DNA of 64,000 nucleotides from Phallusia mammillata (lineage: Eukaryota), in assembly GCA_965637545.1 (NCBI GenBank), contig OZ281495.1:8060001-8124000 (forward strand). The letters run 5' to 3'. The translations under genes and the position numbers were made by a program. The notes beneath the pieces are model-generated. The model searched no databases and was not told the origin of the DNA. It worked only from the letters and a program-made list of their open reading frames with translations. Positions 15,201-55,829 of this stretch are shown one piece after another (positions within the stretch are counted from its first letter, which is position 1; each line of letters begins with the position of its first letter).

Positions 15201-15479
15201 ATTTTTTAGCGGTGGTTCGTGTGAAACAGTAAATTTTGTACCACAACCACCAACATACAGTAAATTACATCACACCTAGGAACGCCTACTAGGTTACTTT
15301 CATTTTGTATGTGTTACATTAAAAACTAAATCATGTTATCAGGTGACGTTTGGTCGTTGGGAAACGCCACCATTACTTCCACGGAGCCCTTCCAGGTTGT
15401 GTTCGAGGGAACAAGGGGCACAGATTTCGCAGGGTACATTGCGATTGATGATGTAACAATCAGACCTTTTAACTGTTGA
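6288..15479 (+). CDS. Gene B: type-1 type II membrane protein with stalk and C-terminal MAM domain; one frameshift in exon 2 (possible pseudogene or internal-start product)
   Basis: Exons 6288-6342 (MNARNCDPPRMEIVEQCY), 10429-10584 (156 nt vs 161 in C/D/F; TM LMWLSLIFVLLIFTVGFVALHFS in the shifted frame), 11152-11185, probable 11273-11311, 11682-11765, 13039-13110, then MAM exons 13592-13741, 14019-14105, 14467-14495, 14981-15065, 15343-15479. All exons after exon 2 are stop-free and phase-compatible. Confidence 0.75.
7152..7651. mobile_element. hAT-type MITE
   Basis: TIRs c(g/a)ggggtcaccaaac; 8-bp TSD caatagac/caatggac. Confidence 0.8.
7972..8933. mobile_element. hAT-type MITE hosting a nested MITE
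   Basis: TIRs cagtggttctcaaa; perfect 8-bp TSD gtgtatgg. Confidence 0.9.
8491..8850. mobile_element. Nested hAT-type MITE
   Basis: TIRs tagtgatgcaccgaa; perfect 8-bp TSD gaattgaa; a partial copy of the same family lies near 53350-53420. Confidence 0.9.
9030..10075 (+). mobile_element. Degraded Ty3/Gypsy LTR retrotransposon
   Basis: LTR-end/PBS-like ..taca-tttggtaacc at ~9187; gag N-terminus MTAAVKSSNAVAIKLPTFWTAQLRSWF*QA from 9228; RT N-terminus KLGLAKKEFHNMLQLGIIQSSSSP*ASPLHIV..WRPCGD* at ~9760-9890; many stops and deletions. Confidence 0.85.
12435..12895 (+). mobile_element. Internally deleted hAT (Buster/Charlie-like) element retaining the transposase C-terminal dimerisation region
   Basis: ORF segment LLIFPATWKCEQGFSVMINIKSKNRNRLGAPGNDFRCAVTKFTPRINQLVDSKQKQNSH; TIR-like ends cagaggttcccaacc / caggtgttcccaacc; no clean TSD. 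Confidence 0.8.
14668..14916. mobile_element. hAT-type MITE
   Basis: TIRs cagtggttct; perfect 8-bp TSD acctaatg. Confidence 0.9.
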
Positions 15480-26772: not shown

Positions 26773-26977
26773 TGACGTCATTGTAAACCCGAAGGTAGCA
26801 TTTCTCGCATGCTCAATTGGAAATCCCCTCCTGCGTAAAACGCGGAAGAAGAATGACTCCTTAAGACACAGCCCGTTTCGAAAGAAGAACGCGCTGGAAC
26901 TATTTCCAGTCCTAATTAAAGCATAAAAACGCACTGCTGAGTATCAAGAGTTAGACTTCGTCAGAGTGATAAGCTTT
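26773..26977 (+). promoter_or_regulatory. Gene C proximal promoter/5' UTR with CRE, kappaB-like and GATA motifs
   Basis: TGACGTCA 26773-26780; GGAAATCCCC 26819-26828 (reverse complement GGGGATTTCC fits GGGRNNYYCC); GAGTGATAAGCTTT 26964-26977. Confidence 0.5.
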
Positions 26978-26997
26978 GCATGCAACTGCTAAAGACA

Positions 26998-29900
26998 ATG
27001 AGTGCACAGAACCGAGGCAGGCCTGGGATGGAAATGGTTCAAAATGAATATGGTACGTAGGATTGATTTTGTTTAAGTTATGTGAAGTTTAAGTTGGACT
27101 TATTTCAGTTAAAACTCTTTGTTGTGGACCTGTCCTGAGTTTATGGTTACTCTTAGACTATACAATGTTAACCCAAATCAGATTAACTCCTGATTTACAG
27201 GCAGTTACCACATAAAAAATGAGCTTACAGGTTTGAGTTTCAACTCTGCCACATTTGCCGACGTAATTTTGATTTCTGATTTTTTTCCTTCTAAATTTAA
27301 TATTTGTTTTATTTAAACCAATTTGCATGTACACCAGGTATGTTGTTCAATTTGTTGCCATCAGTGTGACAACCCGATGATTTTTATGTGTGTGTGTAGA
27401 GGTGGAAAATTAGTCGTTTTTTAACTGAACTTATACAGTCATTATTAGAACAGGCTTTGTATTTGTATTGTGTGCAAATTTAATAAATTTCCCCTTTTTG
27501 CCTTCTTTCATCCCAATATTTGAGTCTTTCGAAAGGTACCACCATAATGCTAGTTATATCACACCGGCAGTTAATGCATTTTGTATATCTTTTGATTGAC
27601 ATTGGATATCCCTTGCTACATTACAATTTGATGTAATACAGATCATATGCTTACGTAACACAATGCCTAATGTCGACATCATTAAAAAGAACGCAATCGC
27701 ATAAGTTTTCAAGCCATTTAGAAGTTACATATGTAGCTTGTCATGCTTCTGTTGTCTTGTGTTTTGCAGAAAATGTTCAACCCACCTCCAGAGTGAGAAA
27801 CAACGAAAAACTTGAAACCATGATAAGGGAGACCAATAAAAGCGTCCAAAGCAATCGAAAACTGATGTGGTTGAGTCTAATCTTTCTACTGGTGATTTTC
27901 ACAGTCGTATTGGTCGCCCTTCATTTCTCGGTACGATTGTGCAAAAATTAATTTGTTCAGCATACATCATTTTTTTACCTCATCTTTAAGTATGATAAAA
28001 ATTGCTATAGTTTAAAGAGGGTTAAAAATGAACTTGTTAAAAAGTATTGAGTGGTTCCTACACTTTTTTCACAGTGCACCTTCCGTCACCTTTATGTGGC
28101 CAAATCATTTTAGCTTTTACGTGCTTGGGGCGTCAAGAAAAAAGGGTAAACTCTCCTTTCAGTATCGTTTTCTAACAATGCAAATATTGTAGTAGTACAA
28201 CAATAGCATAACTTCGCTACATGATTAACCACTAAGCCATCCTTGCTTCAGGTACCTATATAGGTCATATATACAAAATGCTAGATACGCCTCTGCTGTG
28301 GTATATGCAAAATACTCACATACACATAAATATAGTTGGGTCAAAACATTTTACACGACGTATATTGTTTGTTAATATTGAAAATGTCGGCACATCAAAT
28401 AATACATTTATCAATACATATTTTTTCACTAGATTTCTGCAAAAGTAATGGAAACAAGACAAGGTAAATATGGGTCATGTCATTCATAAACTGTTGTCTG
28501 TTTTACATTTCAAAATTTTGTAAAAGTCGTTTGCTTTTTGGAACAAACAATGGTAAAATATGCCTATTTAGTTCAATGTCTTTTAAATGTTATACCAAAT
28601 AAAAACTTACTGTAGGTACTTTGCATCAAAAACCTGAAATGTCCAGCATGTTATACATAATAAAAAATAAAAAATAGGAAGGCAATTAAAAATGGCGTCG
28701 TGCAGAGATTTTAAAACTATTTTACTTATTGTACTCCATCTCCCTACCTGAATACATTTACTCAATGGGTTTCGTGAAATGATTGATCCCAAGCTATACC
28801 GATTTGAAAAGGTTGCGTAGAATGAATGATCCTGAAATAGCGGCAGGAAAAATTCCTATCGCACCACACGAAATTAAAACCACAATGCTTCCTCTAAGCA
28901 GATTGATTATTGAGTTTCGAATCGTGATCAAATTGTTGTGAAGCGCATGCTTGGCTTTTAGGCTATTCTTTTGCAAAACTTGACATCATTGAAAGTCTTC
29001 GCAAGTGTGGTATACAGTGTTCTCCATTGTCCACAAAGTATAGCTATTAACATAATTTTTTACCATAAAACACACAGGGTTTTAACCACATTAAGGTAAA
29101 TAAAAGTTTGAAACGTTCGAGTTTGCTGTCCTTCTACCAAAGCAAACTTTTAGTTTACAAAAGCTGGCATTGCAACAAATTAAACACGCGAATCACAAAA
29201 CAGTTTTAAAGTTCCAATCAGTCTAATTTCTGTATACGTATTTTTTCAGCTTTGCAAACTACCTTGTTGAAACAAATCAACATTTCAATTGAACCAATTC
29301 AATCTGCTGAGAAAAGTTTGACCATGTGGAAAGGTAAGATGCACGTCGTTGAAAATGTCCAATAAAGTTTTGAAACTTTTTTACATCATGATCTATCTGT
29401 TATGTAGTCTTTTTACTCTGGCCTAGTACTACTGAAATATATGGAACGTAAATATTTCCATAACTCGGATTAGTTGGTAGAACGGGACTACGGGAGTCCC
29501 GGAAAGACTCCTGTCGAGGGTTTAAATCCCAGCGCAGGCTAAAATTTTCTAGCCTACACCTTGTCATATGGTGGTGAATGCTTGGGAGACCAGCTGATTC
29601 GGTATAATGCCTTTAATAGGCCTGGCGTACTGTGTAATCATTGTCAAATATATTATTTATATAACATAGAGCTTGGTAATGAATACAAAAGTTTTGTTTT
29701 CGTAATATATTAAACGCAAAATCACTTCAAAATCAAAATCATTACGAGCCCAGCTACAGAGGCCACACAGGTTTCTTACACATTTTTGTGCACTTGAAAA
29801 AATAAACTATCATATACTTATACGTTTAGATGCTGCATTTGTATTGCTTCGTCACTGATGTACGATATTAAAATATCGGTTTCAAGTGATAACCAACCTT

Positions 29901-32900
29901 TGTCGTGTATTCCCATGTTAACATGTTTCTTTCATCTAGCAATGAATGCGAATTATTCGAGTCGTCTCACCGCAACTAACAACAACATTGAACATATGCA
30001 AACGAGTTTGACAGCTTTGAAAGGTAGAACTTTGTTACCCATGTTCCATCATGGTGGTGTTTTAGGCTATGAAATTCTACACGCAACCTACTAATGTAGA
30101 CGTTTATTTTGGCTAAAGAGAACTAATGTGCGAAACTTCAATTGGACACTCGTACGCGTTTAACCATTTTTATTTGATTTCAAACGCGTGACTCCGTGAC
30201 TAGCGGTTTGAAGTCGATTCAAAAGAAACATGAAAAGTATCAAAGTTAGTGACTTGAACATTTGCTTCATTTTAAACCGGTAACATGCAATGTGTTTGCA
30301 TCCCATACAAATATTTTTACAATAGTGTCATTTCGTAAACATAAACCATTGACGTATGTTAAGAGTCATACATGGTGGGAATGTGGTCACAGAACGCAGA
30401 GATTGTTGTTGAACAAAAAACAGTCAGAACATTCATTCGATTGAATACTTGCTGTCGTGATTTGCCAAAAGTGGCTAACAATAAGCATTTTTACCAAAAT
30501 CAAAGCCGAGCTGGAACAAAGTTAATTATCATGAATATCACGTGACTCCTGATACCAAAAAACTGCTTTATACGAAACCTTCCACAGAATAATTCATCCT
30601 GAAATAGCGACAAATAAAGGTTAAATAAATTGATTGGTGCAAAATAACTGGATGATAAGGTTTCGTAAGGCGTTTGTTCTTAAAGTAAATAATGGAAAGT
30701 TGCACCGCATCGAAACAAAGTTAAAAAACTTCCTTAAATGGGATTGATTGTTGAGTTTCGAGTCTTGGTTGAAGTCTGCAAAGCTGATTGTCAGTTTATT
30801 ATAACAATTTTTCAATACATATTTTTTTCCAACGTCCTGCAAGCTTAACTAAACTTGAGTAAGTTATTACATGTCCATAACGGGCACATATTTTTTCATT
30901 GATCCTGCGTTAAGAAGATAAATGTTCATGTTATACTCTAGTTCAGAGGCCCTCTTCTACATTTTTGTGCTGCTCATTCTTAGTGATTCCTTTTGACACA
31001 GAAAAAGTGAAATCAGGTGGTTTGTAACATTATTGTTTACTTCGTTTAGACACATTGCAAAACAACATGTTAACCATGGAAGCAAAACTTACATACTTAC
31101 AAGGTAAAACGAACACCCAAAATCTCATATCCTTATTTACGTTTTCATTTATGCGGATCTAACTTACTATGGTGTAAGTTTTAAGTTTGTTTCTAAACAA
31201 AGTATTACCATGAATATTATAACTCAGTATTAAATGCTTGTGTTTTATTTAACTCTTAGTAAGGTACGGTACGATTTTTTTTTTAAAAAAGTGACTTTTA
31301 TTTATTTTTGAATTGTTGCCACAGATTACTTGGGCATAATTTCCGCACAAGTCACTTCGGGGATTGAAAGTAAGTTTATCTTTACGTTCTCACCCCAATA
31401 TCTGATCGATATGACGTGACCCAAGACCTCTGACATTTTTACCTCACCAGGTGGTTTTGGAAAATAGTAGTTTAACCCGCCATACCGTAAACTACGCAGA
31501 TAACAAAATTAAAAGCAACGACTTTGAATTAAAATTTATTTATAGTCACGTAATAAATTTCAATCGACTGTTGTATATCACCAATTTCTCTTGCAGACTT
31601 TTCATTTTTTGATACCCTTTCAAAATCTGCGTCAAGCATCTTTCCCAGCAGTTTGCCCAACTACTATCGATATTATTACGACGGTGGTAATTACTATATA
31701 AGTGATGGTGGAAATAATATGTACGACTTTGGAAATGAGGTACAATGTTATGTAGTTTAAATTGGTGCCGACAGAATTTTATTGCAGATTTATTAAGTTA
31801 TATATATTGGCACGTAGAGAAACAACAAAGATAATAAGATATACTTTTTTGTAAATTAGATTCGAGTGGGGACAGACTCTGGACGTTCAGTGTACGTCAT
31901 TTACAATACGACCTACAGGTAGGTGTCACTTTGTCACTGAAAATGACATAAAAGACACGTACAAAGAAAAAAATGAAACATATTTGGCCTGGATGGCATG
32001 TACCACTGGCATATGATGTAGCCTACCTGACACATATTTTGTTTAGCGATCCACTGGGCAATTTTTTGATGGTATGCAAAGCTGGGCATCCATTCGTCTT
32101 GTCCATGTTGGTATTAAACCGCGATGGAGAATCTCGAACGTATAACGTCTTGGTAACATATCAATAACATATCTAAGTTTGTTAATATGATTTTGCTTTC
32201 AAACGCACAGTTATAATATATATTTTAGTCGATTGTCTGATCATTACAAAGTAGAGTATAAATATAAAGTCAAGTTGAAACAAAAATGCTAAAACATGTT
32301 TTATCGGAAAGTCAAAATTGGTTTTATTATGTTTCTGTCGTAGTTTGTAACCAGACGTTCCGAATCGTTCTTTTGTAGAAGTCGATTTTGAAACATTACT
32401 TTTGTAGGAGAGTGGCAATTTGGGAGCAGACGGCACAGGAAACTACAGTTGGGATGCTGGATCTTTATTGGTTGGATCATACAATATACAATACGTGTTG
32501 TATCAAGTATACGGAGCCGGCAATCCTTCCATCATACAGATATTCTTCACAGTGTCAAGTCCAGTGAGTGAATGAGTAAAATATTGTCATGCTGTTGCCT
32601 AAAATGATTAAACTAAATCTCCAATAGCATAAACTTGTAAGGTGCGTTTCTAACAAGTAAGAAACTTACCTTCAAAACTTGCTATGCGCAAAGAATACCC
32701 TATAGGTCTAGACTAGAGTATCTCAAAAAGAGGACAAATCCGACAAATGTGCCAAATTCAATTAAAACAAAAAAAATTTGTTGATCTGTAACAATTCAAT
32801 TCATGGTAAAAATAGTAAAAACGCACGTATGTTTCGGTGTGTCATTTTCTCAAACATTTGTATGATTAATTTTGCTGGGATTTTAAAATTTGTTTTAAAA

Positions 32901-33536
32901 ATTTGTCGTATTTGAATTTTTAACACATTTTTTGTGTAATAATATACTCAAGTATAACATCGGCTACGGTTTGTTGTGTAGATACTTGGCTCAAAAGGAA
33001 ATAGTTCACTACATTACTCAGACCATGGGAAGAACACACAGTCGACTTATAACCTAGTCTACATTTCAGGAAACGCTCACAACGTCTACTTCAACTATAT
33101 TCTTACATCCACGTAAGAAACGGTGACGTGAAACGTTTTCGGAATGCCACAAATTTAAAACTTTGTCTGAAAACGTTTTTGAAAAGGCGAAAACATTTTA
33201 GTTTGGGCCCCAAATACGATTTGTCAATGCTACCTGAGATTCGCCATTTGAGCATCTTAATATTAACATAAAATTTAGAAACGCCAGGAAAAGACTGTTT
33301 TAAATGTTCTCGCAAGTACCCAGGTTTGGGACAAAATATTGTGTCTAAGCCTGATGCAATAACGCAGCAATTTTTCTTTATGCCTTTTCCCAAACTTCAG
33401 TTTTGTTTTTGGCTTTTAACCAAAATATATTACAAATGTCGTTTGTTTCAGATATTCGTCATCAAATTCGACTTATGTGCAAGCCAGTACTATTGAGCAA
33501 ATTCTGCGAAGAATTTTTCAAAACTTTTCAGTGTGA
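26998..33536 (+). CDS. Gene C: type-1 type II membrane protein, stalk + uncharacterised ~225-aa head, 397 aa, intact
   Basis: 13 GT-AG exons: 26998-27052, 27770-27930, 28433-28463, 29250-29333, 29940-30023, 31050-31103, 31325-31369, 31597-31739, 31860-31918, 32047-32152, 32408-32563, 32982-33112, 33452-33536; 1194 nt, no internal stop. Tail MSAQNRGRPGMEMVQNEYENVQ.., TM LMWLSLIFLLVIFTVVLVALHFS, head motifs YYISDGGNNMYDFGN, CKAGHPFV, GNLGADG, YQVYGAGNPSIIQIFF. Confidence 0.88.
29463..29660 (+). mobile_element. tRNA-derived SINE
   Basis: A-box-like ttagttggtaga and B-box-like gggtttaaatccc followed by a non-tRNA body and AT-rich tail; duplicated at 39725-39915. Confidence 0.6.
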
Positions 33537-33770
33537 ATGGAAACAAGAGTCTCAACCAACTGCGCTTTCGTTGTTATAAGCTTTTAATATGTCAAGTTAT
33601 TGTAGACTTACAAATTTATTTCAGCTCTTTAATGCAGTTATAATGTAAAGAACATATCGTCACACAATCTGGCAACCGTTTAAATTTAAAACGACTAATC
33701 TAATTTTGGTGGTAATATTGCAATAGAACATTATGCTAAAAGTTGCTACAAACTGAAGTGTTCACATTTA

Positions 33771-34082
33771 TAGAGCTTCTCTGGCATTTTTTATACCGAC
33801 GTTTTGACGTCCTGCGCGTAGTATGATGCACGGTAAAAAAAGGATAAAAAGAATCAAACGCAAGCACGTCACAACGAAAACACTGCTCCATAACGATTGA
33901 TTGGGCCTCTAATCGTTGAGCAGGTACCGGAAGCACGCTTGTGACGTACTTGCGCCTAATTCTTTTCCCCTTGTTTGTCGTGCACTGTACTACGCGCATT
34001 CAGTGGTATTTACCCTGATGAAGGCGACATGTAGGGGACGTCCAAACGTCGGTATAAAAATGCAATAGCCAGAAGAGCTCTA
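33771..34082. mobile_element. TA-flanked MITE with long imperfect TIRs
   Basis: tagagc..gctcta ends flanked by TA; ~70 bp inverted similarity including gcatttttataccgacgtt; the paralogous copy at ~43935-44200 has lost its left TIR. Confidence 0.7.
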
Positions 34083-37140: not shown

Positions 37141-37311
37141 GGAAATCCCCTCCTGTGTAAAAGCAAAATGCTAACCAAGCATTTCTGCGCAGAAAAAAAA
37201 GACTCGTCAAGATACAGCCGAGAATGCGCTGTAACTATTCCAGGCCTAATTAAAGCATATAAAAGAACTGCTGAGTATCAAGAGTTATACTTTGTCAGAG
37301 TGATAAGCTTT
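37141..37311 (+). promoter_or_regulatory. Gene D proximal promoter/5' UTR with kappaB-like and GATA motifs
   Basis: GGGAAATCCCC 37140-37150; GAGTGATAAGCTTT 37298-37311. Confidence 0.5.
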
Positions 37312-37331
37312 ACAAGTAACTGCTAAAGACA

Positions 37332-40300
37332 ATGAGTGCACAGAACCCAGACCAGCCTGGGATGGAAATGGAGGAACAATTTTATGGTAGGTAGGGTTGG
37401 GTTTGTTTAAGTTATGTAAAATTTAAATTGAACCCCAAATTCCAATTAAAACTCTTAGTTGCGCATCTGACCTCACTTTTTGTTTGCAGTGAGGCGATGT
37501 AATAGTAACCCAAATCTAATCAACTCTTGATTTGCAGGCACTTGCCACATAAAAAATTGAGTCGACGGGTCTGAGTTTCAACTCTACCACATTTGCCGAC
37601 GTAGTTTTAATTTCTGATTTTTTTCCAGAGTTTAAAATTTTGATTTTTTCGAATTAGTATGCGCACCGGGTGTTTTGTTCAATTTGTCATCAGTTTGACA
37701 ACCCGAATATTTATATGTGTGTGTAGATGTAGCAAGTTGGTCAATTTTTAACTGAACATACGGTCATTTCAAGCATAAAACATTCAGTTTAGATCAGGCT
37801 TTGTATTTGTAATGCGTGTAAACGTCATTAAAATATTTTAGTCTTTCGAAAGGTATAACCAATGCTAGTTATTTTAAATTAGCAGTTAAACTGCATAAAA
37901 TGCGTACCTTTCCATAAATATTGGATATCCCTAGCTGCAATACAACTTGACGTAATATCGAGCATATGCTGACGTAACACAATGTCTAATGTTGACGTCA
38001 TTGAAATAAACCCAAAGTTTTCAGCTCATTTGGAAGGTACATATGTAGTTTGTCATACTTCTGTTGTCTTATGCTTTGCAGAAAATGTTCAATCCACCGC
38101 CAGAGTAAGAAATAACGAAACACTGGAAAAAATGATGATTGAAACACAAAAAAGTGTTCAAAGCAATCGAAAACTGATGTGGTTGATTTTAATTTTTCTA
38201 CTCCTCGTTTTCACAGTCGGATTTATCGCCATTCATTTCTCGGTACGACTGTGCAAAAATTGATTTGTTTTGCACACAAATCATTTTTTTACCTCATCTT
38301 TAAGTATGATAAAAATTGCTATAGTTTGAACAGGGTCGAAAAATGAACTTTTGAAAAAGTGTTGAGTGGTTCCTAACATTTTTTTAACAGTGCACTTTCC
38401 GTCACCTTTGTGTGGCCAAATCGTTTTAACTCTTTACTTGCTTGAGGCGTCAATACAAAAGGGTAAACGAACCTTTCAGTATCGTTTTCTAACAATGTAA
38501 ATATTGTAGTAGTACAACAATAGCATGACTTCGCTACATGTTTAACCTCTGAGTCATCCCTGTTTGAGGCACATATATTAGGTCTGTAAACAAAAGGCGT
38601 GATACGGCCCTGCTGTGGCATGAGCAAAATACCCAAATACACATAAATATAGTTGGGTCAAAACATTTTATACGACATATATTGTTTTGTAATATTGAAA
38701 ATGTCGGCACATCCAGAATACATTTTTTTACTAGATTTCTGCAAAAGTGGAAATGGAAACAAGACAAGGTAAGATTTGACCATTTCGTTTGTAAACTGTT
38801 GCCTGTTTCACATTTCAAACTTTTGTAAAAGTCATTTGATTTGCGGAACATATAATGATAAAAAATACCTAATTATTTTAATGTCTTTGAAATGTTGTGC
38901 CCACTAAAAACTTACTGTAAGTATTTTGCACTAAAAACCATAAATGTACAGCATGTTAATCAAGAGAAAACATTAAAAATGGCGTTGTGTAGAGATTTTA
39001 AAAACTCTATCTACATGAACACTTTTACACAATGAGTTTCGGGAATGACTGATCCCAAGATATACCGATGTGAAAAGGTTGCGTAGAATGAATGATCCTG
39101 AAACACCGGAAGGAAATAATGCATTCACACGAAACTACAACTACAATGCTTCCTCTAAACAGATTGATTGTTGAATTTCGAATCGTGATCAAATTGTTGT
39201 GAAGCGCATGCTTGGCTTTTAAGCTATTCTTGTGCAAAACTTTACATCACTGAAAGTCTTCGCAAGCGTAGTATACAGTGTTATCCGGTGCCCACAAAGT
39301 AAAGCTATTAATATGATTCTTTACCATAAAACACACAGGGTTTTAACCACATTAAGGTAAATAAAAGTTTGAAACGTTCGACTTTGCTGTCCTTCGACCA
39401 AAGCAAACTTTTAGTTTACAAAAGCTGGCCTTGCAACAAATTAAACAGGCGTATCACAAAACAGTTTTAAATTTTGCAATCAGCCTGATTTATACATACG
39501 CATTTTTTCAGCTTTGCAAACTACCTTGTTGAAACAAATCAACACTTCAAATCAAGCAATTCAATCTGCTGAGAAAAGTTTGACCATGTGGAAAGGTAAG
39601 ATGCACGTCGTTGAAAATGTCCGATAAAGTTTTGAAACTTTTTTACATCATGATCTATCTGTTATGTAGTCTTTTTACTCTGGCCTAGTACTACTGAAAT
39701 ATATGGAACGTAAATATTTCCATAACTCGGATTAGTTGGTAGAGCGGGAGTCCCGGAAAGACTCCTGTCGAGGGTTTAAATCCCAGCGCAGGCTAAAATT
39801 TTCTAGCCTACACCTTGCCATATGGTGGTGAATGCTTGGTGACCGGCTGATTCCGTATGGTGCTTTCAATGGGCCTGACGTAGTGTAATCATTGTCAAAT
39901 ATATTACTTATATAACATAGAGCTTGGTAATGAATACAAAAGTTTTGTTTTCGTAATATATTAAACGCAAAATCACTTCAAAATCAAAATCATTACGAGC
40001 CCAGCTACAGAGGTCACACAGGTTTCTTACACATTTTTGTGCACTTGAAAAAATAAACTATCATATACTTATACGTTTAGATGCTGCATTTGTATTGCTT
40101 CGTCACTGATGTACGATATTAAAATATCGGTTTCAAGTGATAACCAACCTTTGTCGTGTATTCCCATGTTAACATGTTTCTTTCATCTAGCAATGAATGC
40201 GAATTATTCGAGTCGTCTCACCGCAACTAACAACAACATTGAACATATGCAAACGAGTTTGACAGCTTTGAAAGGTAGAACTTTGTTACCCATGTTCCAT

Positions 40301-43300
40301 CATGGTGGTGTTTTAGGCTATGAAATTCTACACGCAACCTACGAATGTAGACGTTTATTTTGGCTAAAGAGAACTAATGTGCGAAACTTCAATTGGACAC
40401 TCGTACGCGTTTAACCATTTTTATTTGATTTCAAACGTGACTAGCGGTTTGAAGTCGATTCAAAAGAAACATGAAAAGTATCAAAGTTAGTGACTTGAAC
40501 ATTTGCTTCATTTTAAACCGGTAACATGCAATGTGTTTGCATCCCATACAAATATTTTTACAATAGTGTCATTTCGTAAACATAAACCATTGACGTATGT
40601 TAAGAGTCATACATGGTGCGAATGTGGTCACAGAACGCAGAGATTGTTGTTGAACAAAAAACAGTCAGAACATTCATTCGATTGAATACTTGCTGTCGTG
40701 ATTTGCCAAAAGTGGCTAACAATAAGCATTTTTTACCAAAATCAAAGCCGAGCTGGAACAAAGTTAATTATCATGAGTATCACGTGACTCCTGATACCAA
40801 AAAACTGCCTGATACGAAACCTTCCACAGAAAAATTCATCCTGAAAAAGCGACAAATAAAGGTTAAATAAATTGATTGGTGCAAAATAACTGGATGATAA
40901 GGTTTCGTAAGGCGTTTGTTCTTAAAGTATATAATGGAAAGTTAAGGAGATTGATTGTTGAGTTTCGAGTCTTGATTGAAGTCTGCAAAGCTGATTGTCA
41001 GTTTATTATAACATTTTTTCAATACATATTTTTTTCCAACGTCTTGCAAGCTTAAATAAACTTGAGTAAGTTATTACATGTCCATAACGGGCACATATTT
41101 TTTTATTGATCAGATAAATGTTCATGTTATACTCTACTTCAGAGGCCCTCTTCTACATTTTTGTGCTGCTCACTCTTAGTGATTCCTTTTGACACAGAAA
41201 AAGTGAAATCAAGTGGTTTGTAACATTATTGTTTACTTCTTTTAGACACATTGCAAAACAACATGTTAACCATGGAATCAAAACTTACATACTTACAAGG
41301 TAAAACGAACACCCAAACTCTCATATCCTTATTTACGTTTTCATTTATGCGGATCTAACTTACTATGGTGTAGTTTTAAGTTTGTTTCTAAACAAAGTAT
41401 TACCATGAATATTATAACTCAGTATTAAATGCTTGTGTTTTATTTAACTCTTAGTAAGGTACGGTACGATTTTTTTTTTTAAAAAGTGACTTTTATTTAT
41501 TTTTGAATTGTTGCCACAGATTACTTGGGCATAATTTCCGCACAAGTCACTTCGGGGATTGAAAGTAAGTTTATCTTTACGTTCTCACCCCAATATCTGA
41601 TCGATATGACGTGACCCAAGACCTCTGACATTTTTACCTCACCAGGTGGTTTTGGAAAATAGTAGTTTAACCCGCCATACCGTAAACTACGCAGATAACA
41701 AAATTAAAAGCAACGACTTTGAATTAAAATTTATTTATAGTCACGTAATAAATTTCAATCGACTGTTGTATATCACCAATTTCTCTTGCAGACTTTTCAT
41801 TTTTTGATACCCTTTCAAAATCTGCGTCAAGCATCTTTCCCAGCAGTTTGCCCAACTACTATCGATATAATTACGACCGTAGTAATTACTATATAAGTGA
41901 TGGTGGAAATAATATGTACGACTTTGGAAATCAGGTACTTTGTTATGTAATTTAAATTGGTGCCGACAGAATTTTATTGCAGATTTATTAAGTTATATAT
42001 ATTGGCACGTAGAGAAACAACAAAGATAATAAGATATACTTTTTTGTAAATTAGATTCGAGTGTGGACAGACTCTGGACGTTCAGTGTACGTCATTTACA
42101 ATACGACCTACAGGTAGGTGTCACTTTGTCACTGAAAATGACATAAAAGACACGTACAAAGAAAAAAAATGAAACACATTTGGCCTGGATGGCATGTACC
42201 ACTGGCATATGATGTAGCCTACCTGACACATATTTTGTTTAGCGATCCACTGGGCAATTTTTTGATGGTATGCAAAGCTGGGCACCCATTCTTCTTGTCC
42301 ATGTTGATATTAAATCGCGATGGAGGATCTCGAACGTATAACATCATGGTAACATATCAATAACATATCTAAGTTTGTTAATATGATTTTGCTATCAAAC
42401 GCACAGTTATAATATGTATTGTAGTCGATTGTCTGATCATTACGACGTCGAATATAGATATTAAGTTAAGTTGAAACAAAAATGCTAAAACATGTTTTTT
42501 ATCGGAAAGTCAAAATTGGTTTTATTATATTTCTGTCGTAGTTTGCAAACGGACGTTTCGAATCGTTGTTTTGCAGAAGTCTAAATTATTCGATTTTGAA
42601 ACATTTCGTTTGTAGGAGGGTGGCAATTTGGGAGCAGACGGCAGAGGAAACTACAGTTGGGATGCTGGATCTTTATTGGTAGGATCATACAATATACGAT
42701 ACGTGTTGTATCAAGTATACGGAGCCGGCAATCCTTCCATCATACAGATATACTTCACAGTTTCAAGTCCAGTAAGTGGATGAGTGAAATATTGTCATGT
42801 TGTTGCCTAAAATGATTAAACTGAAGCTTCAATAGTATAAACTTGTAAGGTTCTTTTCTAACAAGTAAGAAAACTTATCTTCAAAACTTGCTATGCGCAA
42901 AGAATAACCTAGGCCTAGACTAGAGTATCTCAAAAAGAGGACAAATCCCACAAATGTGCCAAATTCAATCAAAAAAATTTTTTAATTCTGTAACAATTAA
43001 GTTTATGGTGAAAATAGTAAAAACGCACTTATGTTCCGGTGTGTCACTTTCTCAAACGTTTTTATTATTAATTTTGCTGGGATTTTGAATTTTATAAAAA
43101 AAAATTGTCGTATTTCAATTTTTCACACATTTTTTGTGTAATAATATACTCAGGTATAACATCGGCTACGTTTTGTTGTGTAGATACTTGGCTCAAAAGG
43201 AAATAGTTCACTACATTACTCAGACTATGAGAAGAACACACAGTCGACTTATAATCTAGTCTACATTTCAGGAAACGCTCACAACGTCTACTTCAACTAT

Positions 43301-43738
43301 ATTCTTACATCCACGTAAGAAACGGTGACGTGAAACGTTTTCGGAATGCCACAAATTTAAAACTTTGTCTGAAAACGTTTTTAAAAAGGCGAAAACATTT
43401 TAGTTTGGGCCCCAAATACGATTTGTCAATGCTACCTGAGATTCGCCATTTGAGCATCTTAATATTTACATAAAATTTAGAAACGCCAGGAAAAGACTGT
43501 TTTAAATGTGCTCGCAAGTACCCAGGTTTGGGACAAAATATTGTGTCTAAGCCTGATGCAATAACGCAGCAATTTTTCTTTATGCCTTTTCCCAAACTTC
43601 AGTTTTGTTTTTGGCTTTTAACCAAAATATATTACAAATGTCGTTTGTTTCAGATATTCGTCATCAAATTCGACTTATGTGCAAGCCAGTACTATTGAGC
43701 AAATTCTGCGAAGAATTTTTCAAAACTTTTCAGTGTGA
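37332..43738 (+). CDS. Gene D: tandem paralog of gene C, 398 aa, intact
   Basis: Exons 37332-37386, 38082-38242, 38735-38768, 39512-39595, 40191-40274, 41246-41299, 41520-41564, 41792-41934, 42055-42113, 42243-42348, 42616-42771, 43184-43314, 43654-43738; 1197 nt, no internal stop. Tail MSAQNPDQPGMEMEEQFYENVQ. Confidence 0.88.
39725..39915 (+). mobile_element. tRNA-derived SINE (copy carried by the C/D duplication)
   Basis: ttagttggtagagc A-box, gggtttaaatccc B-box; same intron position as 29463-29660. Confidence 0.6.
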
Positions 43739-45499
43739 ATGGAAACAAGAGTCTCAACCAACTGCGCTTTCGTTGTTATAAGCTTTTAATATGTCAAGAT
43801 ATTATAGACTTACAAATTTATCTCAGCTCCTTAATGCAGTTATAATGTAAAGAACATATCGCCACACAATCTGGCAACCGTTTAATTTTAAAACGTCTAA
43901 TCTAATTTTAGTGGTAATATTGCAATAGAACATTTTCGACGTCCTGCGCATAGTACAGTAAACAAAGGGAAAAAAGAAATAAACGCAAGCACGTCACAAC
44001 GAAAACACTGCTCCATAACGATTGATTGGGCCTCTAATGTTTGAGCAGGTTCCGAAAGCACGCTTATGACGTACTTGCGTTTAATTCTTTTTCCCTTTGT
44101 TTGTCATGCACTGTACTGCGCGCATTCAGTGTTATTTATGGCGACATGTATGGGACGTTTAAACGTCGGTATAAAAATGCAATAGCCAGAAGAGCTCTAT
44201 ACATTTGAAATTATGCTTGGCAGCAACAGCCTATAAAAACTGAACCGCCCTTTAAAAGTGTAAACCCTGGTATAAATTGCTGCCAGATGCCGAAATTAAT
44301 CCGGTCCTAATTTTGTTTGCTGTTGCCGAGGATTGTTTCCCACAATGTCGCTTTTGTGAATTTCGCATTGGTTATAGCGCAATCATAACATGTTGACTGC
44401 GTTTGACCGTCTTTATTTGTGTGTCTATTTCTCCTATATGGAGACACGTACTTTCCGCATGGTATTCGGTTAATTTTACAACCCCGGAGATTTTTTATTT
44501 TGTTTGTTTTTTTGCGACGCCAAATTTATATCCTTTTATCGCCGTTATGAATAAAACTAGTAAACAATGACTTTTCTATAAAAATCCAAATCACTGGTTC
44601 CTAAAACTTTTTGTGTCGCTGCACCTGAGATCAATCAAACGCATTTATACCACATTAAAAAAATCAATGTTATTACCCCCAGAAAAATGTACAAATTATC
44701 CCACAGGTTAAGAACCACTGACATGTAAACCGAAATAAACACATTAAAAAAAGGTTCAATTGTAACAGTTAATGTAGCGTAATGCTTCTCTACCATATCG
44801 CTTTCTTCCTTAAGTTTTTGTTTGTTGTTGGCACTTAAGGCTTTGATCATTGTCACATTTGCACTATGCGAGCTATTCGGCGATAAATAGTAAAGTGGCC
44901 TTTAAAATGTATATAACTACGAATCTCGTGCATGTGCTTTACAAGACTTTGACCCAAAAATTACAAGAAGAAAGCAGACAAACGTTTACTAATACCGATT
45001 TTATTATTTTACGGTTGTTTTTGAAAGTGCAAGTCGCCATGGAAAGTTGCGTTTGTAATCGTATAAAATTCAAGGGACGTGCGTTTTTTTCTCATTTTTA
45101 CTCTGCTTACATATTTACCATGTCTAGTTTTCTCGCCAATGAATAATTAAACTGCTTTTTTCGTATTTTCTTGCAAAAATTGGTCTTTATTTGATTCAAC
45201 AATCACTTTTCGTGGTGTGCCCAAATTGACTGCAACGATTTGATTTGCTTATTAATTCTGTGCCCGTCTTCGAAGTGCGCTGTAAATAAAGAAAAAATGC
45301 AATTTGATTTGATATGTCGTTTGTTGGGGATTATTATGGATGAAATCTAACACTACTAAACTGCCATGTGGCGTTGTCTTAAATCAATAGATTCTTAACC
45401 AGGGGTTCAAGTCTTGTTTATAAGGGGAGCGAAAATTCTGATTCATTGGGGTTGTGGAATAAAAGTTAGTTTGCATAACAAAAATTTTAAACGGGAAGA

Positions 45500-52900: not shown

Positions 52901-55829
52901 TATAGGTTTAATTTTGTTGAAAACAAATTCTCAACCAAAATTGGTAATCAGCAATTTTTATAAAGCAAACACTTTTTGAAGGTAATTCATTCGTCGATGC
53001 ACTTTCCAATTTCTCATCAAGCATCTTTCAGAGCAGTTTGCCCAATTACTACGAATTTAATTACGACGGAAATAACAATTACAGCATAAGTGATGGTGGA
53101 CATGATATGTATGACACAGGAAATAAGGTACAGTGTTATGTAATTTGGACTCATACGTTTATTGGTTTGAATTTTAAAACGTAGGTGGACAATGAACAAT
53201 AGGATTTGTTATTTTTTTGTTGACTTTGCTTCAAGTGTAAACAGTATTTTTTTAAACATTTAGCTGAAAGTCTGGAGAAACAACGAGACGAAAGTGCAAG
53301 TCATTTACAACTCGACTTATACGTAAGTGCCACTGTTGCAGAACATTTCCACTAGTGATGCAACGAACCCGCCTGAAAAAGGGCCGAAACCAAATATGTG
53401 GACAATATATGACCGAACCTAAAATCTTTTTTTAAAGAATGTTTCTAACTAAACCCTTTATTGTTAATGCAGGTAAACTAATTTATGGCACTTCAAACAA
53501 GTTTTACAAACCGTAAGCCACATAAAACACGAAATATTATGCAGACGACGTGGCTTCCAGACGCATAGATTAGTTAATTTGTGACGTTTTAAGTTGGTGA
53601 CACTGAAGTTGAAAACTTAGTAATCCAGCCCTGTTAAATACGCTGTACCAAATCAGCCAGTTCGGTTTAGGCTAATGGTTCTCAACTGATTCTGATCGCG
53701 TATCAATTCCCGGCTTTTCTATCGTTTCGTACCACCTAAACCCTGTTCGAATGGGTAGACCAAGAAATAGGCCTACTTTTTTGACCCTGCTAACATAACT
53801 CTGAAACCAGCAAGGTTAGCAATTTCAAAAACAATGCTTAGGACACGAAATTTCGAAACCAGGCCTGATCAAAGTGGGTTGCAGTTCTTCATCTAAATAG
53901 AATAAGGTATAGCAGAAATGCACTGGCGTACGAGCGAAAAAGCTCCGCCAGATACTACTAGAGGTTCGCCTACCAAACGTGTCACGGAAAAAAAAAACTG
54001 GTATTACAGGTGTCACGGAAGGTATTACAGGTGTCATTGATGAATGACTTAGTTTGTATAACACGTGTCACTGGCAGCTAATTGTGGCCTTACAAGACAC
54101 GACTCACTAAAAATTGGCTCGGCCTGTGTTAACTTGGCACTGAAATATGACTTGCATGGCAGGTGTCAGTGACGAAAGAATGACATATTAATCGTGACAC
54201 TTTGATCATTATTGACTTCACGCTTTTTTATTCTGTTTATGACTCGAATTCAAAAATGGTTTAAAAGACACAATATATTTCGTTTTGTTTAGCCATCCTC
54301 AAGGCTATTTTTCCATGGTTTGCAAAGCGTTGCACCCATTCGTCTTATCTATGCTGGTGTTAAATCCTGGTGGAAGATCCTGGCAGTATAACATCAAGGT
54401 AACATGTCAATGATACAACGCATACTTTAATCTGATATGTAGGCCATGCTTGTCATTAAAGTATTCCTCAAAGCAGTGTTTTGCAAAGTATTGGCCCCGA
54501 CCTGAAGTTTTGTCGCAAAAAGTGTTCTAGCCTATTGGTATTTTAAAATTTGTAACCTATATAGTAAACCAACTGACAGTGTAGTGCATTCTTGCGACGG
54601 TGTAAACTAGTTTTTCAGCTAACTGCAAACTGTTCAGTTTTCAGTGTAAAAGTGCAACTCAGTGTAATGCAATCAACCCGCCTTAAAGTCGAATTTTCTG
54701 TAAAACATGACGAATAATCTGGGTCGATTCTGGCGTCGGAGTTTTGATGATATCTTCAGTCTAGCAGTTATTACAACTGATTTAAAGGATCCTTAGTCAA
54801 GTTTTTTTGCACTTTGCGACAAAATATACTTAAATAAGAAAGTTCAACGTATTTTATTACAAAAAAGCTGCTATAGAGTGTTTAAAATTAACTATGTTTT
54901 AGGTTGATGTTTTCAAAACATCTGTTGTATTTTTAAAACATGCATTAACAGGAAATGGGTGATTTGGGAGCAGACGGCAGAGGAAACTATAATTGGAGTA
55001 CTGGATCTTTATCCGTCAGATCATTTAACATACAATACGTGTTGTATCAAGTTTATGGAACCAGCGATCCTTCCATCATACAGATATTCTTTGCAGTGTC
55101 AAGTCCAGTACGTAGATACATATATAAAAATTAAACGTGTATATCACAAGGAAATGAATTATTTCAAAGATAATAGAATCAGCTCCAGCAACGTACATTT
55201 GATTGTTTAGATACTTGGCTCGACAGGATCCAGTTCTCTACATTATGTGGATTCGCAGGGAAACACACGAGAAACCGATCACAAAGTCTACATTTCAGGG
55301 ACCGCTCACAACGTCTACTTCAACTATATTCTAATATCCACGTAAGAATTTATTAAGCGCTTTCGGGATATTAGTCATAAAGAAGTTCTGTCTTTAAATT
55401 GTGTGCAAGACGCACAAATGTTTTTTGGGGCCTCGTGTGTGATTTGTAAATCCAAAATGACTTGGAAAACTGAAAGGTTAGCCTTTTAGCTCTTTTCTAA
55501 TTTCCTTTTAAACCTAAGCTAAACACACACGCAATCAACAGGAAAATATATTAAGGCAGACAAATTCAAATTTCCTGCATCTTCCGTCACTACAGGCACC
55601 AATGAGACAATAGTTTATGCCAAACAAAAGGATAATTTACTTCATCTACCGAAACAAAGTCGACGCAATGTAAAAAACGTTTTTTCGAACGATGCTTAAC
55701 GCGATTCATTTTAGTAACGCTCTACGTTTATTGTTTGCTTTTATTCAGCCAATCTAATGTCATTTTAGGTATCCATCGTCTTATGTGCCAACCAGTACCG
55801 TTGAAGCGATCCTGCCACAGATTTTTTAA
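49951..55829 (+). CDS. Gene E: type-1 type II membrane protein with the uncharacterised head, 366 aa, intact
   Basis: Exons 49951-50005, 50630-50769, 51326-51359, 51631-51714, 51876-51950, 52751-52804, 52982-53127, 53264-53322, 54293-54398, 54952-55107, 55211-55341, 55769-55829; 1101 nt, no internal stop. Tail MNSRNCDPPKMEMEESYYENIA; head motifs YSISDGGHDMYDTGN, CKALHPFV, GDLGADGRG, YQVYGTSDPSIIQIFF. Confidence 0.85.

What the first reader, a model, noticed from the sequence alone, without database searches (positions are those of the whole stretch)
31597..33536. Unrecognised ~225-aa head domain with bacterial-looking motifs
Seen: six exons with identical phases in C, D and E; conserved YxISDGG(N/H)(N/D)MYDxGN, CKAxHPFV, G(N/D)LGADGxG, YQVYGxx(N/D)PSIIQIFF, VYISGxAHNVYFNYIL; rich in Tyr, Gly, Asn, Ser; only one Cys, so no intradomain disulfide, which is unusual for an animal extracellular domain. 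I cannot assign it to any named Pfam family. I recall DGGxDMYDxGN and GNLGADG strings from uncharacterised marine invertebrate and microbial proteins, unverified. Inference: beta-rich, possibly Ca2+/glycan-binding recognition module, perhaps of horizontal origin.
Basis: partly seen in the sequence, partly recalled or inferred. Interest (0 to 1): 0.82.

Follow-up and report, generated by a model that had tools for sequence, protein, structure and literature searches.

The report
Bacterial-type head domain of tunicate receptors
The stretch encodes a real, still unnamed 224-residue protein domain that sea squirts share with bacteria and phages but, as far as I could search, with no other animals, and that this genome uses in dozens of copies, among them the outward-facing heads of a cluster of membrane receptors.

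Summary
Window 31597-33539 is the six-exon C-terminal head of gene C. Copies D and E have the same exon lengths, phases and AG/GT sites, one Cys each, and 39-44% Tyr+Gly+Asn+Ser.

The head belongs to a domain family that Pfam, NCBIfam and PHROGs do not model. It aligns over 200-225 residues, at 26-35% identity, with domains inside giant bacterial surface proteins. These are mostly from Bacteroidota, many with a type IX secretion sorting tail. It also matches the C-terminal ends of small ORFs on phage contigs.

Every named eukaryotic homologue is a tunicate (Phallusia, Ciona, Clavelina, Styela). There the domain heads type II receptors with a coiled-coil neck, forms tandem arrays of up to eight copies, and sits as an insertion inside intelectin-like lectins.

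This genome holds at least 61 copies. My best reading is a ligand-binding, probably glycan-binding, head of bacterial or phage origin. Ligand binding, calcium dependence and horizontal transfer are inferred, not shown. The scan has only first-reader notes here; none on other DNA turned up.

The parts
31597..31739 (+). Gene C head exon 1 (enters in phase 1; N-terminal helix and the I.DGG.DMYD.GN loop)
   Evidence: AG/GT sites and frame. The motif is invariant in 11 paralogues. A contig of run X5 (RNA by guess) covers 31597-31741 only.
31860..31918 (+). Gene C head exon 2 (59 nt)
   Evidence: AG/GT sites. It keeps the frame between exons 1 and 3. Same length in D and E.
32047..32152 (+). Gene C head exon 3 (CKAGHPF, the only Cys)
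   Evidence: Conserved in genomic paralogues.
32408..32563 (+). Gene C head exon 4 (G.LGADG.G loop, YQVYG..PSIIQIFF strands)
   Evidence: It has 61 matches in the same genome. Its profile finds 139 proteins in 1.84 billion.
32982..33112 (+). Gene C head exon 5 (AHNVYFNYIL strand)
   Evidence: A contig of run X3 (RNA by guess) stops at 33112 and continues with a paralogue's exon 6.
33452..33539 (+). Gene C head exon 6 (C-terminal helix, TGA stop at 33537-33539)
   Evidence: The C-terminal helix is in the AlphaFold model of the related head.
27820..33539 (+). Gene C as a whole: a type II membrane protein with a tail and transmembrane exon, several neck exons, then the head. The transmembrane exon is 27820-27933, or starts at the in-frame ATG at 27670. 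Neck exons lie near 28433-28465, 29938-30024, 30193-30246 and 31049-31103. The neck junctions are not all resolved.
   Evidence: The ORF holds a hydrophobic stretch. The region is colinear with P0163. A simple four-exon neck model gave no open frame, so these coordinates are approximate.
41792..43741 (+). Gene D head: six exons, 41792-41934, 42055-42113, 42243-42348, 42616-42771, 43184-43314, 43654-43741. It is 93% identical to C in protein.
52982..55829 (+). Gene E head: six exons, 52982-53127, 53264-53322, 54293-54398, 54952-55107, 55211-55341, 55769-55829. It is 66% identical to C.

Best explanation
Window 31597-33539 encodes the C-terminal extracellular head of a type II membrane protein of an ascidian, of or near the genus Phallusia.

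The head is one copy of an undescribed domain of about 215-230 residues. An N-terminal helix and a C-terminal helix flank a sandwich of about 11 beta strands. The family-wide invariant residues lie in three loops: I.DGG.DMYD.GN, G.GADG.G and DPS.

The same domain occurs in three other settings:
- singly or in tandem inside giant secreted surface proteins of bacteria;
- at the C-terminal end of small phage ORFs;
- in tunicates, where it has multiplied.

In this gene cluster a coiled-coil neck most likely holds several heads together above the membrane. This is the layout of CD23, langerin or DC-SIGN, but with a different head. Paralogues in the cluster carry a MAM domain in the head position instead.

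I read the head as a ligand-binding module, most likely for a carbohydrate or microbial surface. The acidic invariant loops would form the binding site, perhaps with a metal. I read its presence in tunicates as the result of an old transfer from a bacterium or phage.

Shown here: the exon structure, the domain family, its spread, the predicted fold and the architectures.
Inferred: binding, ligand class, metal dependence, oligomer number and direction of transfer.
For: Gene and splicing.

Whole-domain homology with bacteria:
- The tblastn alignments cover head residues 1-225 at 26-35% identity.
- 63 bacterial loci were found from one motif pattern.
- The full ORFs carry HYR domains, choice-of-anchor-D Ig domains and type IX secretion tails.

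No model in Pfam, NCBIfam or PHROGs, and no solved structure related by sequence.

Fold:
- The bacterial model has pLDDT 90.8 and pTM 0.91. The tunicate model has pLDDT 91.9 and pTM 0.91.
- Against the ESM Atlas, TM by query is 0.55-0.58.

Tunicate architectures:
- P0163 has a tail, a transmembrane stretch, a neck and a head.
- There are 8, 7, 4 and 2 tandem copies in Phallusia, Ciona, Clavelina and Styela proteins.
- The domain is inserted between XEEL residues 168 and 182 of an intelectin-like domain.

Neck: three copies of P0163 45-374 scored ipSAE 0.34 against a best control of 0.00. The mark was reached by 21 of 30 solved homo-pairs and 0 of 23 solved single chains. The runs agree in at least 70% of contacts and the partner's pLDDT is 42. 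Contacts run along residues 50-139 with a 3-4 spacing.

MAM-headed paralogues lie in the same cluster.

Spread:
- All named eukaryotic hits are tunicates.
- 4 of 300 other sampled Bacteroidota genomes carry the domain.
- 30 viral contigs carry it, and three phage models match at TMq 0.60-0.74.
- On the tree, tunicate and unnamed eukaryote-like rows group together (SH-aLRT 81). With the phage-type rows they sit on one side of a branch with support 95, apart from 95 bacterial-type rows.
Against: - No ligand, metal or binding was tested, and I could not inspect model coordinates. That the invariant loops lie next to each other is assumed.
- The trimer job is outside the tool's calibration, which used two copies. 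The heads were not folded in it, and it passed only just (0.34 against a mark of 0.32).
- The restriction to tunicates rests on an exon-4 profile built from tunicates and on word-limited searches. About 17 unnamed eukaryote-like sequences from metagenomes and transcriptome assemblies, with WSC, Sushi, CUB, Kringle or fibrinogen-type partners, could come from other phyla.
- The tree is a quick search, it is unrooted, and its unnamed rows were drawn with a tunicate-biased query.
- Expression of gene C itself is not shown. The RNA evidence comes from paralogues at 93% likeness or more, from runs whose RNA label is a guess.
Confidence: 0.6

Rival explanations
1. The domain is an enzyme, or a degenerate enzyme, that acts on carbohydrates rather than a binding head. 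The invariant acidic motif would be a catalytic or metal centre.
For: The residues that stay invariant from bacteria to tunicates are Asp, Asn, Gly and Tyr, in loops. The structural neighbours include catalytic mutarotase-like proteins and PL4/PL26 lyases.
Against: - Lys, Arg and Asn positions nearly invariant in the bacterial copies (K135, R180, N146 of the L021 domain) are not kept in tunicates.
- The domain occurs as 2-8 tandem copies in one chain and swaps with MAM as a receptor head. Both are typical of binding modules.
- No CAZyme or other enzyme family matches by sequence.
- Most structural neighbours are non-catalytic accessory domains.
Confidence: 0.15
2. The domain is a structural module: a rigid spacer, or an oligomerisation or calcium-stabilised scaffold unit of surface proteins, with no specific ligand. 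Its expansion in tunicates would reflect matrix or tunic proteins rather than receptors.
For: In bacteria it sits among Ig-like, SdrD_B, HYR and fn3 spacer domains. Tunicates have long tandem arrays without other recognisable domains.
Against: - In the window's genes, and in about 25 of 30 phage ORFs, it is the terminal, distal domain. Binding domains usually sit there.
- It is inserted into a lectin domain.
- Spacers rarely keep invariant surface-loop motifs across kingdoms.
- Variation among the paralogous heads concentrates in three short stretches rather than being spread evenly. This comes from a rough stitched alignment.
Confidence: 0.15
3. The domain is ancient and vertically inherited in eukaryotes. 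It was kept in tunicates, lost or diverged beyond recognition elsewhere, and no gene was transferred from bacteria or phage.
For: The tree is unrooted, and the eukaryotic rows form their own group rather than nesting inside one bacterial lineage. Unnamed eukaryote-like sequences of unknown origin exist. My searches for other animals were limited in sensitivity.
Against: - More than 20 named eukaryotic carriers all belong to one subphylum. The same exon-4 profile reached bacterial proteins, so equally distant animal copies should have surfaced.
- The bacterial spread covers many phyla but is sparse, and phages carry the domain. This is the pattern of a mobile module.
- Intron positions differ between subfamilies of the same genome; exons 3 and 4 are fused in L012. 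This is consistent with, though it does not prove, introns gained after arrival.
Confidence: 0.25
4. The stretch is not a working gene part. It would be a pseudogene array, an assembly artefact or bacterial contamination.
For: None found. Transcription of gene C itself is not directly shown.
Against: - All three copies have open frames through six exons with canonical splice sites.
- They lie inside a 33.6-Mb contig among paralogues.
- Spliced Phallusia proteins have the same structure.
- The contigs of the runs labelled RNA (a guess) lie on exons and respect the splice site.
- DNA contigs of two further runs cover the whole stretch.
Confidence: 0.02

Closest known systems
Beta-supersandwich (galactose-mutarotase-like) domains of carbohydrate-active enzymes: the N-terminal domains of GH94 (5h3z), GH65 (7fe3, 3wiq), GH15 (1lf6) and GH116 (7w2t), plus stand-alone mutarotase-like proteins
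   Different: Sequence identity is 3-11% and no profile matches. The Foldseek TM is at most 0.40. The domain is smaller, with about 11 strands and two flanking helices. It is never attached to an (alpha/alpha)6 catalytic barrel, and it has its own invariant loops.
Type II lectin receptors with a coiled-coil neck (CD23, langerin, DC-SIGN; from my own knowledge)
   Same: A short N-terminal tail, a signal-anchor, a heptad-repeat neck and a C-terminal globular head. The genes lie in a tandem cluster of diverging paralogues.
   Different: The head is not a C-type lectin domain (no Pfam match). It has one cysteine and so no internal disulfide. Its ligand is unknown.
MAM domain heads of the neighbouring paralogues
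   Same: They occupy the same position on the same kind of tail, transmembrane and neck scaffold, in the same cluster (first-reader note s1-408668).
   Different: Unrelated sequence and family. MAM is recognised by Pfam; this domain is not.
Intelectins (X-type lectins: human intelectin-1 4wmq, Xenopus XEEL 4wmo)
   Same: They are not homologous to the head. However, Ciona, Clavelina and unnamed relatives carry this domain as an insertion of about 250 residues inside an intelectin-like domain, some with a collagen stalk.
   Different: The window's genes have no intelectin part. The insertion architecture is a separate use of the same module.
Giant multi-domain surface proteins of Bacteroidota secreted by the type IX system
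   Same: True sequence homologues of the head at 26-35% identity over the whole domain, in one to four copies per protein.
   Different: They are prokaryotic and intronless, and embedded among Ig-like, HYR, SdrD_B, Kelch and subtilase domains. They keep Lys, Arg and Asn positions that tunicates lost. They are rare: 4 of 300 other sampled Bacteroidota genomes.

Membership tests
Any curated protein family (Pfam-A 2025, NCBIfam 20.0, PHROGs v4) | A profile match at or near the curated cut-off over the head | tested here: not met
   There were no families for the five exon pieces at E up to 10. P0006, P0163 and the eight-domain P0001 also gave none. In two bacterial carriers the domain stretch stays blank in Pfam and NCBIfam. 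The phage ORFs are blank in PHROGs.
   Pfam gives nothing on the head. The Fibrinogen_C and intelectin matches in P0074, P0085 and P0094 lie outside the domain, on either side of it. None of these folds is among the structural neighbours.
Galactose-mutarotase-like beta-supersandwich fold | A structural alignment that covers most of the domain and stands clearly above background | tested here: inconclusive
Galactose-mutarotase-like beta-supersandwich fold | Sugar-binding or catalytic residues of the characterised members | not testable with these tools
   Model coordinates cannot be read here. Identity in the alignments is 3-11%, too low to transfer residues.
Type II coiled-coil receptor architecture | An N-terminal signal-anchor followed by a heptad-repeat neck that self-associates | tested here: met
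   The hydrophobic stretch lies in the exon at 27820-27933 and in P0163 residues 15-38. For three copies, ipSAE is 0.34 against a best control of 0.00. The mark was reached by 21 of 30 solved homo-pairs and 0 of 23 solved single chains. Run agreement is at least 70% and the partner's pLDDT is 42. Contacts at residues 50-139 have a 3-4 spacing. The oligomer number is not settled.
The new domain family itself (DGG.DMYD.GN / GADG domain) | Whole-length alignment with the three invariant loops, in bacterial, phage and tunicate members | tested here: met
   Alignment A4 has 38 rows. The D, G and N of the first loop, a Tyr and the first Gly of GADG are invariant. I.DGG.D, DG.G and Y.L are 90% or more conserved. 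The HMM built from it finds full-length domains in all groups.

The most novel reading that the evidence does not exclude
A surface-binding module of phages or bacteria was captured once by the tunicate ancestor. It then became raw material for chordate-lineage recognition proteins in three ways: as the variable head of a tandem cluster of coiled-coil type II receptors that alternates with MAM heads, as long tandem arrays, and as an insertion that adds a second binding site to intelectin lectins. It would be a second large functional innovation from horizontal transfer in tunicates, after cellulose synthase, and this time in non-self or microbe recognition.
Probability: 0.3. Interest if true: 0.8.

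Novelty: new variant of a known kind. Interest (0 to 1): 0.62.

Why it matters
The domain is a sizeable, well-folded module that no curated library describes. It spans bacteria, phages and one animal subphylum.

If the tunicate restriction holds, it is a clean case of a foreign extracellular module domesticated by a chordate relative and amplified to at least 61 copies in one genome. Several of its uses look like recognition: receptor heads interchangeable with MAM, and an insertion into intelectin.

It also gives a concrete, testable object. The head is about 225 residues, has one cysteine and should be expressible. That suits work on what tunicate surface receptors and the uncharacterised giant proteins of Bacteroidota bind, and it gives a seed alignment for a new family model.

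Tried and rejected
- Pfam on single exon pieces gave nothing, as expected for 27-52 residues.
- Foldseek against the PDB gave no clear match. The top rows have TM of 0.40 or less, or are START domains at rmsd 16-17 A.
- The profile search of PDB sequences gave only chance hits to kinetochore CTF3 at E 0.05 or worse.
- The ESM Atlas search by features gave scores of 0.81 or less to small phage proteins, below the tool's noise line. I did not use them.
- PHROGs on phage carriers and their neighbours gave no function. One neighbour matched a 'hol-like chemotaxis' family, which says nothing about a tail module.
- I suspected that G.LGADG.G resembles RTX calcium repeats, because the exon-4 profile hit repeat proteins in 8-20 stretches. 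Three that I checked are mostly Big_13/Big_6 Ig repeat proteins with no RTX domain, so I dropped the idea.
- Word-based protein searches were insensitive. They found 2, 18 and 17 proteins.
I used the exon-1 alignment instead.
- A four-exon model for the tail and neck of gene C gave no open frame. At least one more small exon, near 28433-28465, is needed. I left the neck unresolved because it lies outside the finding.
- No intronless copy exists among the genomic paralogues I fetched, so the spliced window protein had no reference. I did not type it into any tool. All family, fold and complex work on the animal head used the database proteins P0006 and P0163, which are 70-71% identical to head C (up to 74% to E).
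- I found no paper on the domain or its motif strings.
Full report
1. THE OBSERVATION

The window is eukaryotic DNA of about 35% G+C with no gaps. Reading 31300-33800 and joining the open pieces at AG/GT sites gives six exons for copy C: 31597-31739, 31860-31918, 32047-32152, 32408-32563, 32982-33112 and 33452-33539. They encode 224 residues and end in a TGA at 33537-33539.

Copy D runs from 41792 to 43741 and copy E from 52982 to 55829. Both have the same exon lengths (143 or 146, 59, 106, 156, 131, then a variable last exon), the same phases and canonical sites throughout. The intron before the head is phase 1.

Each head has one cysteine, and Tyr+Gly+Asn+Ser makes up 39-44%.

C and D are part of a 6.9-kb tandem duplication, 26886-33732 against 37221-43934, at 90% DNA identity. 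Their heads are 93% identical in protein, and E is 66% identical to C.

2. IT IS A REAL, SPLICED GENE PART

The same genome (G000, 240 Mb; the window is C2:8060001-8124000) has at least 61 matches to exon 4:
- about 24 close ones along C2 7.96-8.82 Mb;
- about 30 diverged ones at C4 18.58-18.67 Mb;
- a few elsewhere.

All the copies I fetched are split by introns. In one diverged copy exons 3 and 4 are fused.

A profile of exon 4 (A1), scored against 1.84 billion proteins, found 139 hits. The closest are two Phallusia mammillata proteins:
- P0006 (250 aa) is colinear with the six exons.
- P0163 (374 aa) is also colinear, and shows the whole architecture: 14 residues of tail, a hydrophobic signal-anchor, about 110 residues of heptad-like neck, then the head.

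The window heads are 66-77% identical to these two. The best paralogue elsewhere in G000 is 88-95% identical to P0163. So the window comes from Phallusia or a close relative, but not from the same haplotype or species as those records.

I laid public contigs on 27600-33590:
- Two DNA-like runs cover everything.
- Two runs labelled RNA (the label is a guess) cover only the transmembrane exon and head exons 1, 4 and 5, plus a repeat.
- One of those contigs ends exactly at 33112 and continues with letters that encode the start of P0006's last exon.
- Another spans 31597-31741 only.

These are paralogue transcripts at 93% likeness or more. They confirm the splice sites but not the expression of gene C itself.

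3. WHAT THE DOMAIN IS

No library names it. Pfam, NCBIfam and PHROGs leave it blank in the window pieces, in P0006, P0163 and the eight-domain P0001, in bacterial carriers and in phage ORFs.

The exon-1 alignment (A2) gave the pattern I.DGG.[DN]MYD. That pattern pulled 63 loci from bacterial genomes. They are mostly Bacteroidota (Fulvivirga, Flavobacteriales, Saprospiraceae, Chitinophagales), but also Verrucomicrobiota, Planctomycetota, Zixibacteria, Eisenbacteria, Ignavibacteria, Acidobacteriota and a cyanobacterium.

The spliced head aligns with many of these over residues 1-225 at 26-35% identity. Two carriers show the context:
- a 1645-aa Fulvivirga ORF with choice-of-anchor-D Ig domains and a type IX sorting tail;
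- a 1416-aa Bizionia ORF with HYR domains and the same tail.
In both, the domain sits in an otherwise unannotated gap.

Other carriers add SdrD_B, Kelch, fn3 and a subtilase domain, and hold two to four tandem copies.

The domain is rare. In an even sample of 300 other Bacteroidota genomes only four carry it, always in ORFs of 780-3697 residues.

Thirty IMG/VR viral contigs also carry it. In about 25 of them it forms the C-terminal end of a 270-390-residue ORF. Three phage models in BFVD match the tunicate model at TMq 0.60-0.74 with probability 1.00.

4. FOLD

I made two independent AlphaFold models:
- a bacterial domain with 17 bacterial rows (A3): pLDDT 90.8, pTM 0.91;
- the Phallusia head P0006 21-250 with 38 mixed rows (A4): pLDDT 91.9, pTM 0.91.

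Both show the same plan: a long N-terminal helix, a loop region that holds DGG.DMYD.GN, about 11 strands in a sandwich, and a C-terminal helix. The G.GADG.G and DPS motifs fall in loops between long strands.

Foldseek finds no clear PDB match, and no solved chain is related by sequence.

5. WHERE IT OCCURS IN EUKARYOTES, AND IN WHAT FORMS

Every eukaryotic hit that carries a name is a tunicate: Phallusia mammillata, Ciona intestinalis, C. savignyi, Clavelina lepadiformis or Styela clava.

The domain appears in these architectures:
(a) tail, transmembrane stretch, neck and head, as in the window;
(b) tandem arrays of 8 (Phallusia), 7 (Ciona), 4 (Clavelina) and 2 (Styela) copies;
(c) Sushi or CUB domains followed by one to three copies;
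(d) an insertion of about 250 residues inside an intelectin-like domain.

For (d), Ciona P0094 matches Xenopus XEEL in two pieces: residues 83-235 with XEEL 14-168, and residues 489-568 with XEEL 182-261. The domain lies between them. Some of these proteins have a collagen stalk and others a membrane anchor.

About 17 unnamed sequences come from metagenomes and transcriptome assemblies. They are intronless in the assemblies, have WSC, Sushi, CUB, Kringle or fibrinogen-type partners, and group with the tunicate copies. I could not establish which organisms they come from.

I built a quick maximum-likelihood tree of 165 domains:
- One starred branch (95) separates 95 bacterial-type rows from a group of 70.
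- That group holds all 39 tunicate rows, the unnamed eukaryote-like rows, the phage-type clade and two small unnamed clades.
- Tunicate plus eukaryote-like rows form one group with SH-aLRT 81.
- The window heads, with P0006 and P0163, form a fully supported clade on a long branch (1.16).

The tree is unrooted, and its unnamed rows were sampled with a tunicate-biased profile.

6. HOW IT MOST LIKELY WORKS

Gene C has an exon that encodes the tail and signal-anchor at 27820-27933; an in-frame ATG at 27670 is an alternative start. Several neck exons and the six head exons follow. I could not resolve every neck junction.

Three copies of P0163 45-374 were predicted to associate through the neck. 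The ipSAE was 0.34 against a best control of 0.00. The mark was reached by 21 of 30 solved homo-pairs and 0 of 23 solved single chains. The runs agree in at least 70% of contacts, and the partner's pLDDT is 42. Contacts at residues 50-139 have the 3-4 spacing of a parallel coiled coil. This is a bare pass, outside the two-copy calibration, and the heads were not folded in it.

MAM exons lie in the window at 341-505, 2140-2274, 13609-13767 and 15342-15476, and are interspersed through the whole cluster. The same scaffold therefore carries either a MAM head or this head.

Three lines of evidence point the same way:
- The domain takes the distal position in receptors and in phage ORFs.
- It is used in tandem in bacterial surface giants.
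- It is grafted into a lectin.

From this I conclude that the domain is a binding module displayed multivalently, and that the invariant acidic loops are the likely site. A carbohydrate ligand is suggested only by the fold class and by the intelectin association. Calcium is suggested only by the Asp/Asn/Gly loops. None of this was measured.

7. ORIGIN

Several observations favour an old transfer into the tunicate stem, followed by intron gain and expansion:
- The domain is sparse but spread over many bacterial phyla.
- Phages carry it.
- Among named eukaryotes it occurs in a single animal subphylum.
- The eukaryotic copies form one group on the tree.

Vertical inheritance with loss elsewhere is not excluded. 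I give transfer roughly 0.6 and vertical descent 0.25.

8. COMPARISON AND NOVELTY

The gene works like a coiled-coil type II lectin receptor, but its head is not a C-type lectin domain. The head looks like a small supersandwich but is not a member of any described family. I found no paper on it or on its motif strings.

I rate it a new variant of a known kind: a recognition-type receptor and surface-protein module built on an undescribed domain family. The possibly horizontal origin and the intelectin insertion are the parts a specialist would find surprising.

The scan's earlier notes on this window are first-reader notes only. A search of its findings by words turned up no report of the domain.

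Noticed in passing
P0094 (Ciona intestinalis XP_018669535), P0074 (C. savignyi H2Z0U1), P0085 and P0058 (Clavelina and unnamed); not in the window: Ascidian intelectin-like proteins carry this domain as an insertion of about 250 residues between XEEL residues 168 and 182. Some have an N-terminal collagen stalk and others a membrane anchor. This nested lectin-plus-module architecture is not named in any source record I saw.
   Followed up: partly
window 341-505, 2140-2274, 13609-13767, 15342-15476, and through G000:C2 7.99-8.78 Mb: MAM-domain exons lie in genes A and B of the window. They are interspersed with the new-domain heads along the whole cluster, so one tail, transmembrane and neck scaffold carries two alternative head types.
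   Followed up: partly
window 29400-29800 (intron of gene C; presumably repeated in the duplicated copy D, not checked): A short element has a very high summed depth in the DNA-like runs: about 59,000 and 98,000 against a few hundred on either side. It is also present in the RNA-labelled contigs, with many different flanks. It is a high-copy dispersed repeat, not classified.
   Followed up: no
G000:C4 18.58-18.67 Mb; P0001 (Phallusia, 1914 aa) and P0002 (Ciona, 1724 aa): A second, diverged cluster has about 30 exon-4 matches within 90 kb. Separately, Phallusia and Ciona proteins made of 7-8 tandem copies of the domain have no other recognisable domain.
   Followed up: partly
L080-L109 (IMG/VR viral contigs); BFVD A0A8S0HZG8, A0A6J5PYY2, A0A6J5NIC1: Phage contigs encode the domain, mostly as the C-terminal end of 270-390-residue ORFs without any PHROG annotation. 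On the tree these group nearer to the tunicate copies than the Bacteroidota copies do.
   Followed up: partly
L079 (JGI 3300037841, 4986 nt) and L110 (ENA ERZ21736675, 739-kb contig): These are intronless eukaryote-like genes: WSC plus Sushi plus three copies of the domain on L079, and CUB plus the domain on L110. They come from environmental assemblies of unknown organism. L079 holds a second carrier on the opposite strand.
   Followed up: no
G000:C2 8819178-8825656 (minus strand): The best genomic match to the Phallusia mammillata protein P0163 is only 88-95% identical exon by exon. The assembly therefore differs from the source of that record, by species, by haplotype or by a missing paralogue.
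   Followed up: no
window 27670-27951: The open frame of the transmembrane exon extends 50 codons upstream of the Met that starts P0163. That upstream part is conserved at the protein level with the copy at 10338-10511, at 40% over 58 residues. The true start, and so the length of the cytoplasmic tail, is undecided.
   Followed up: no
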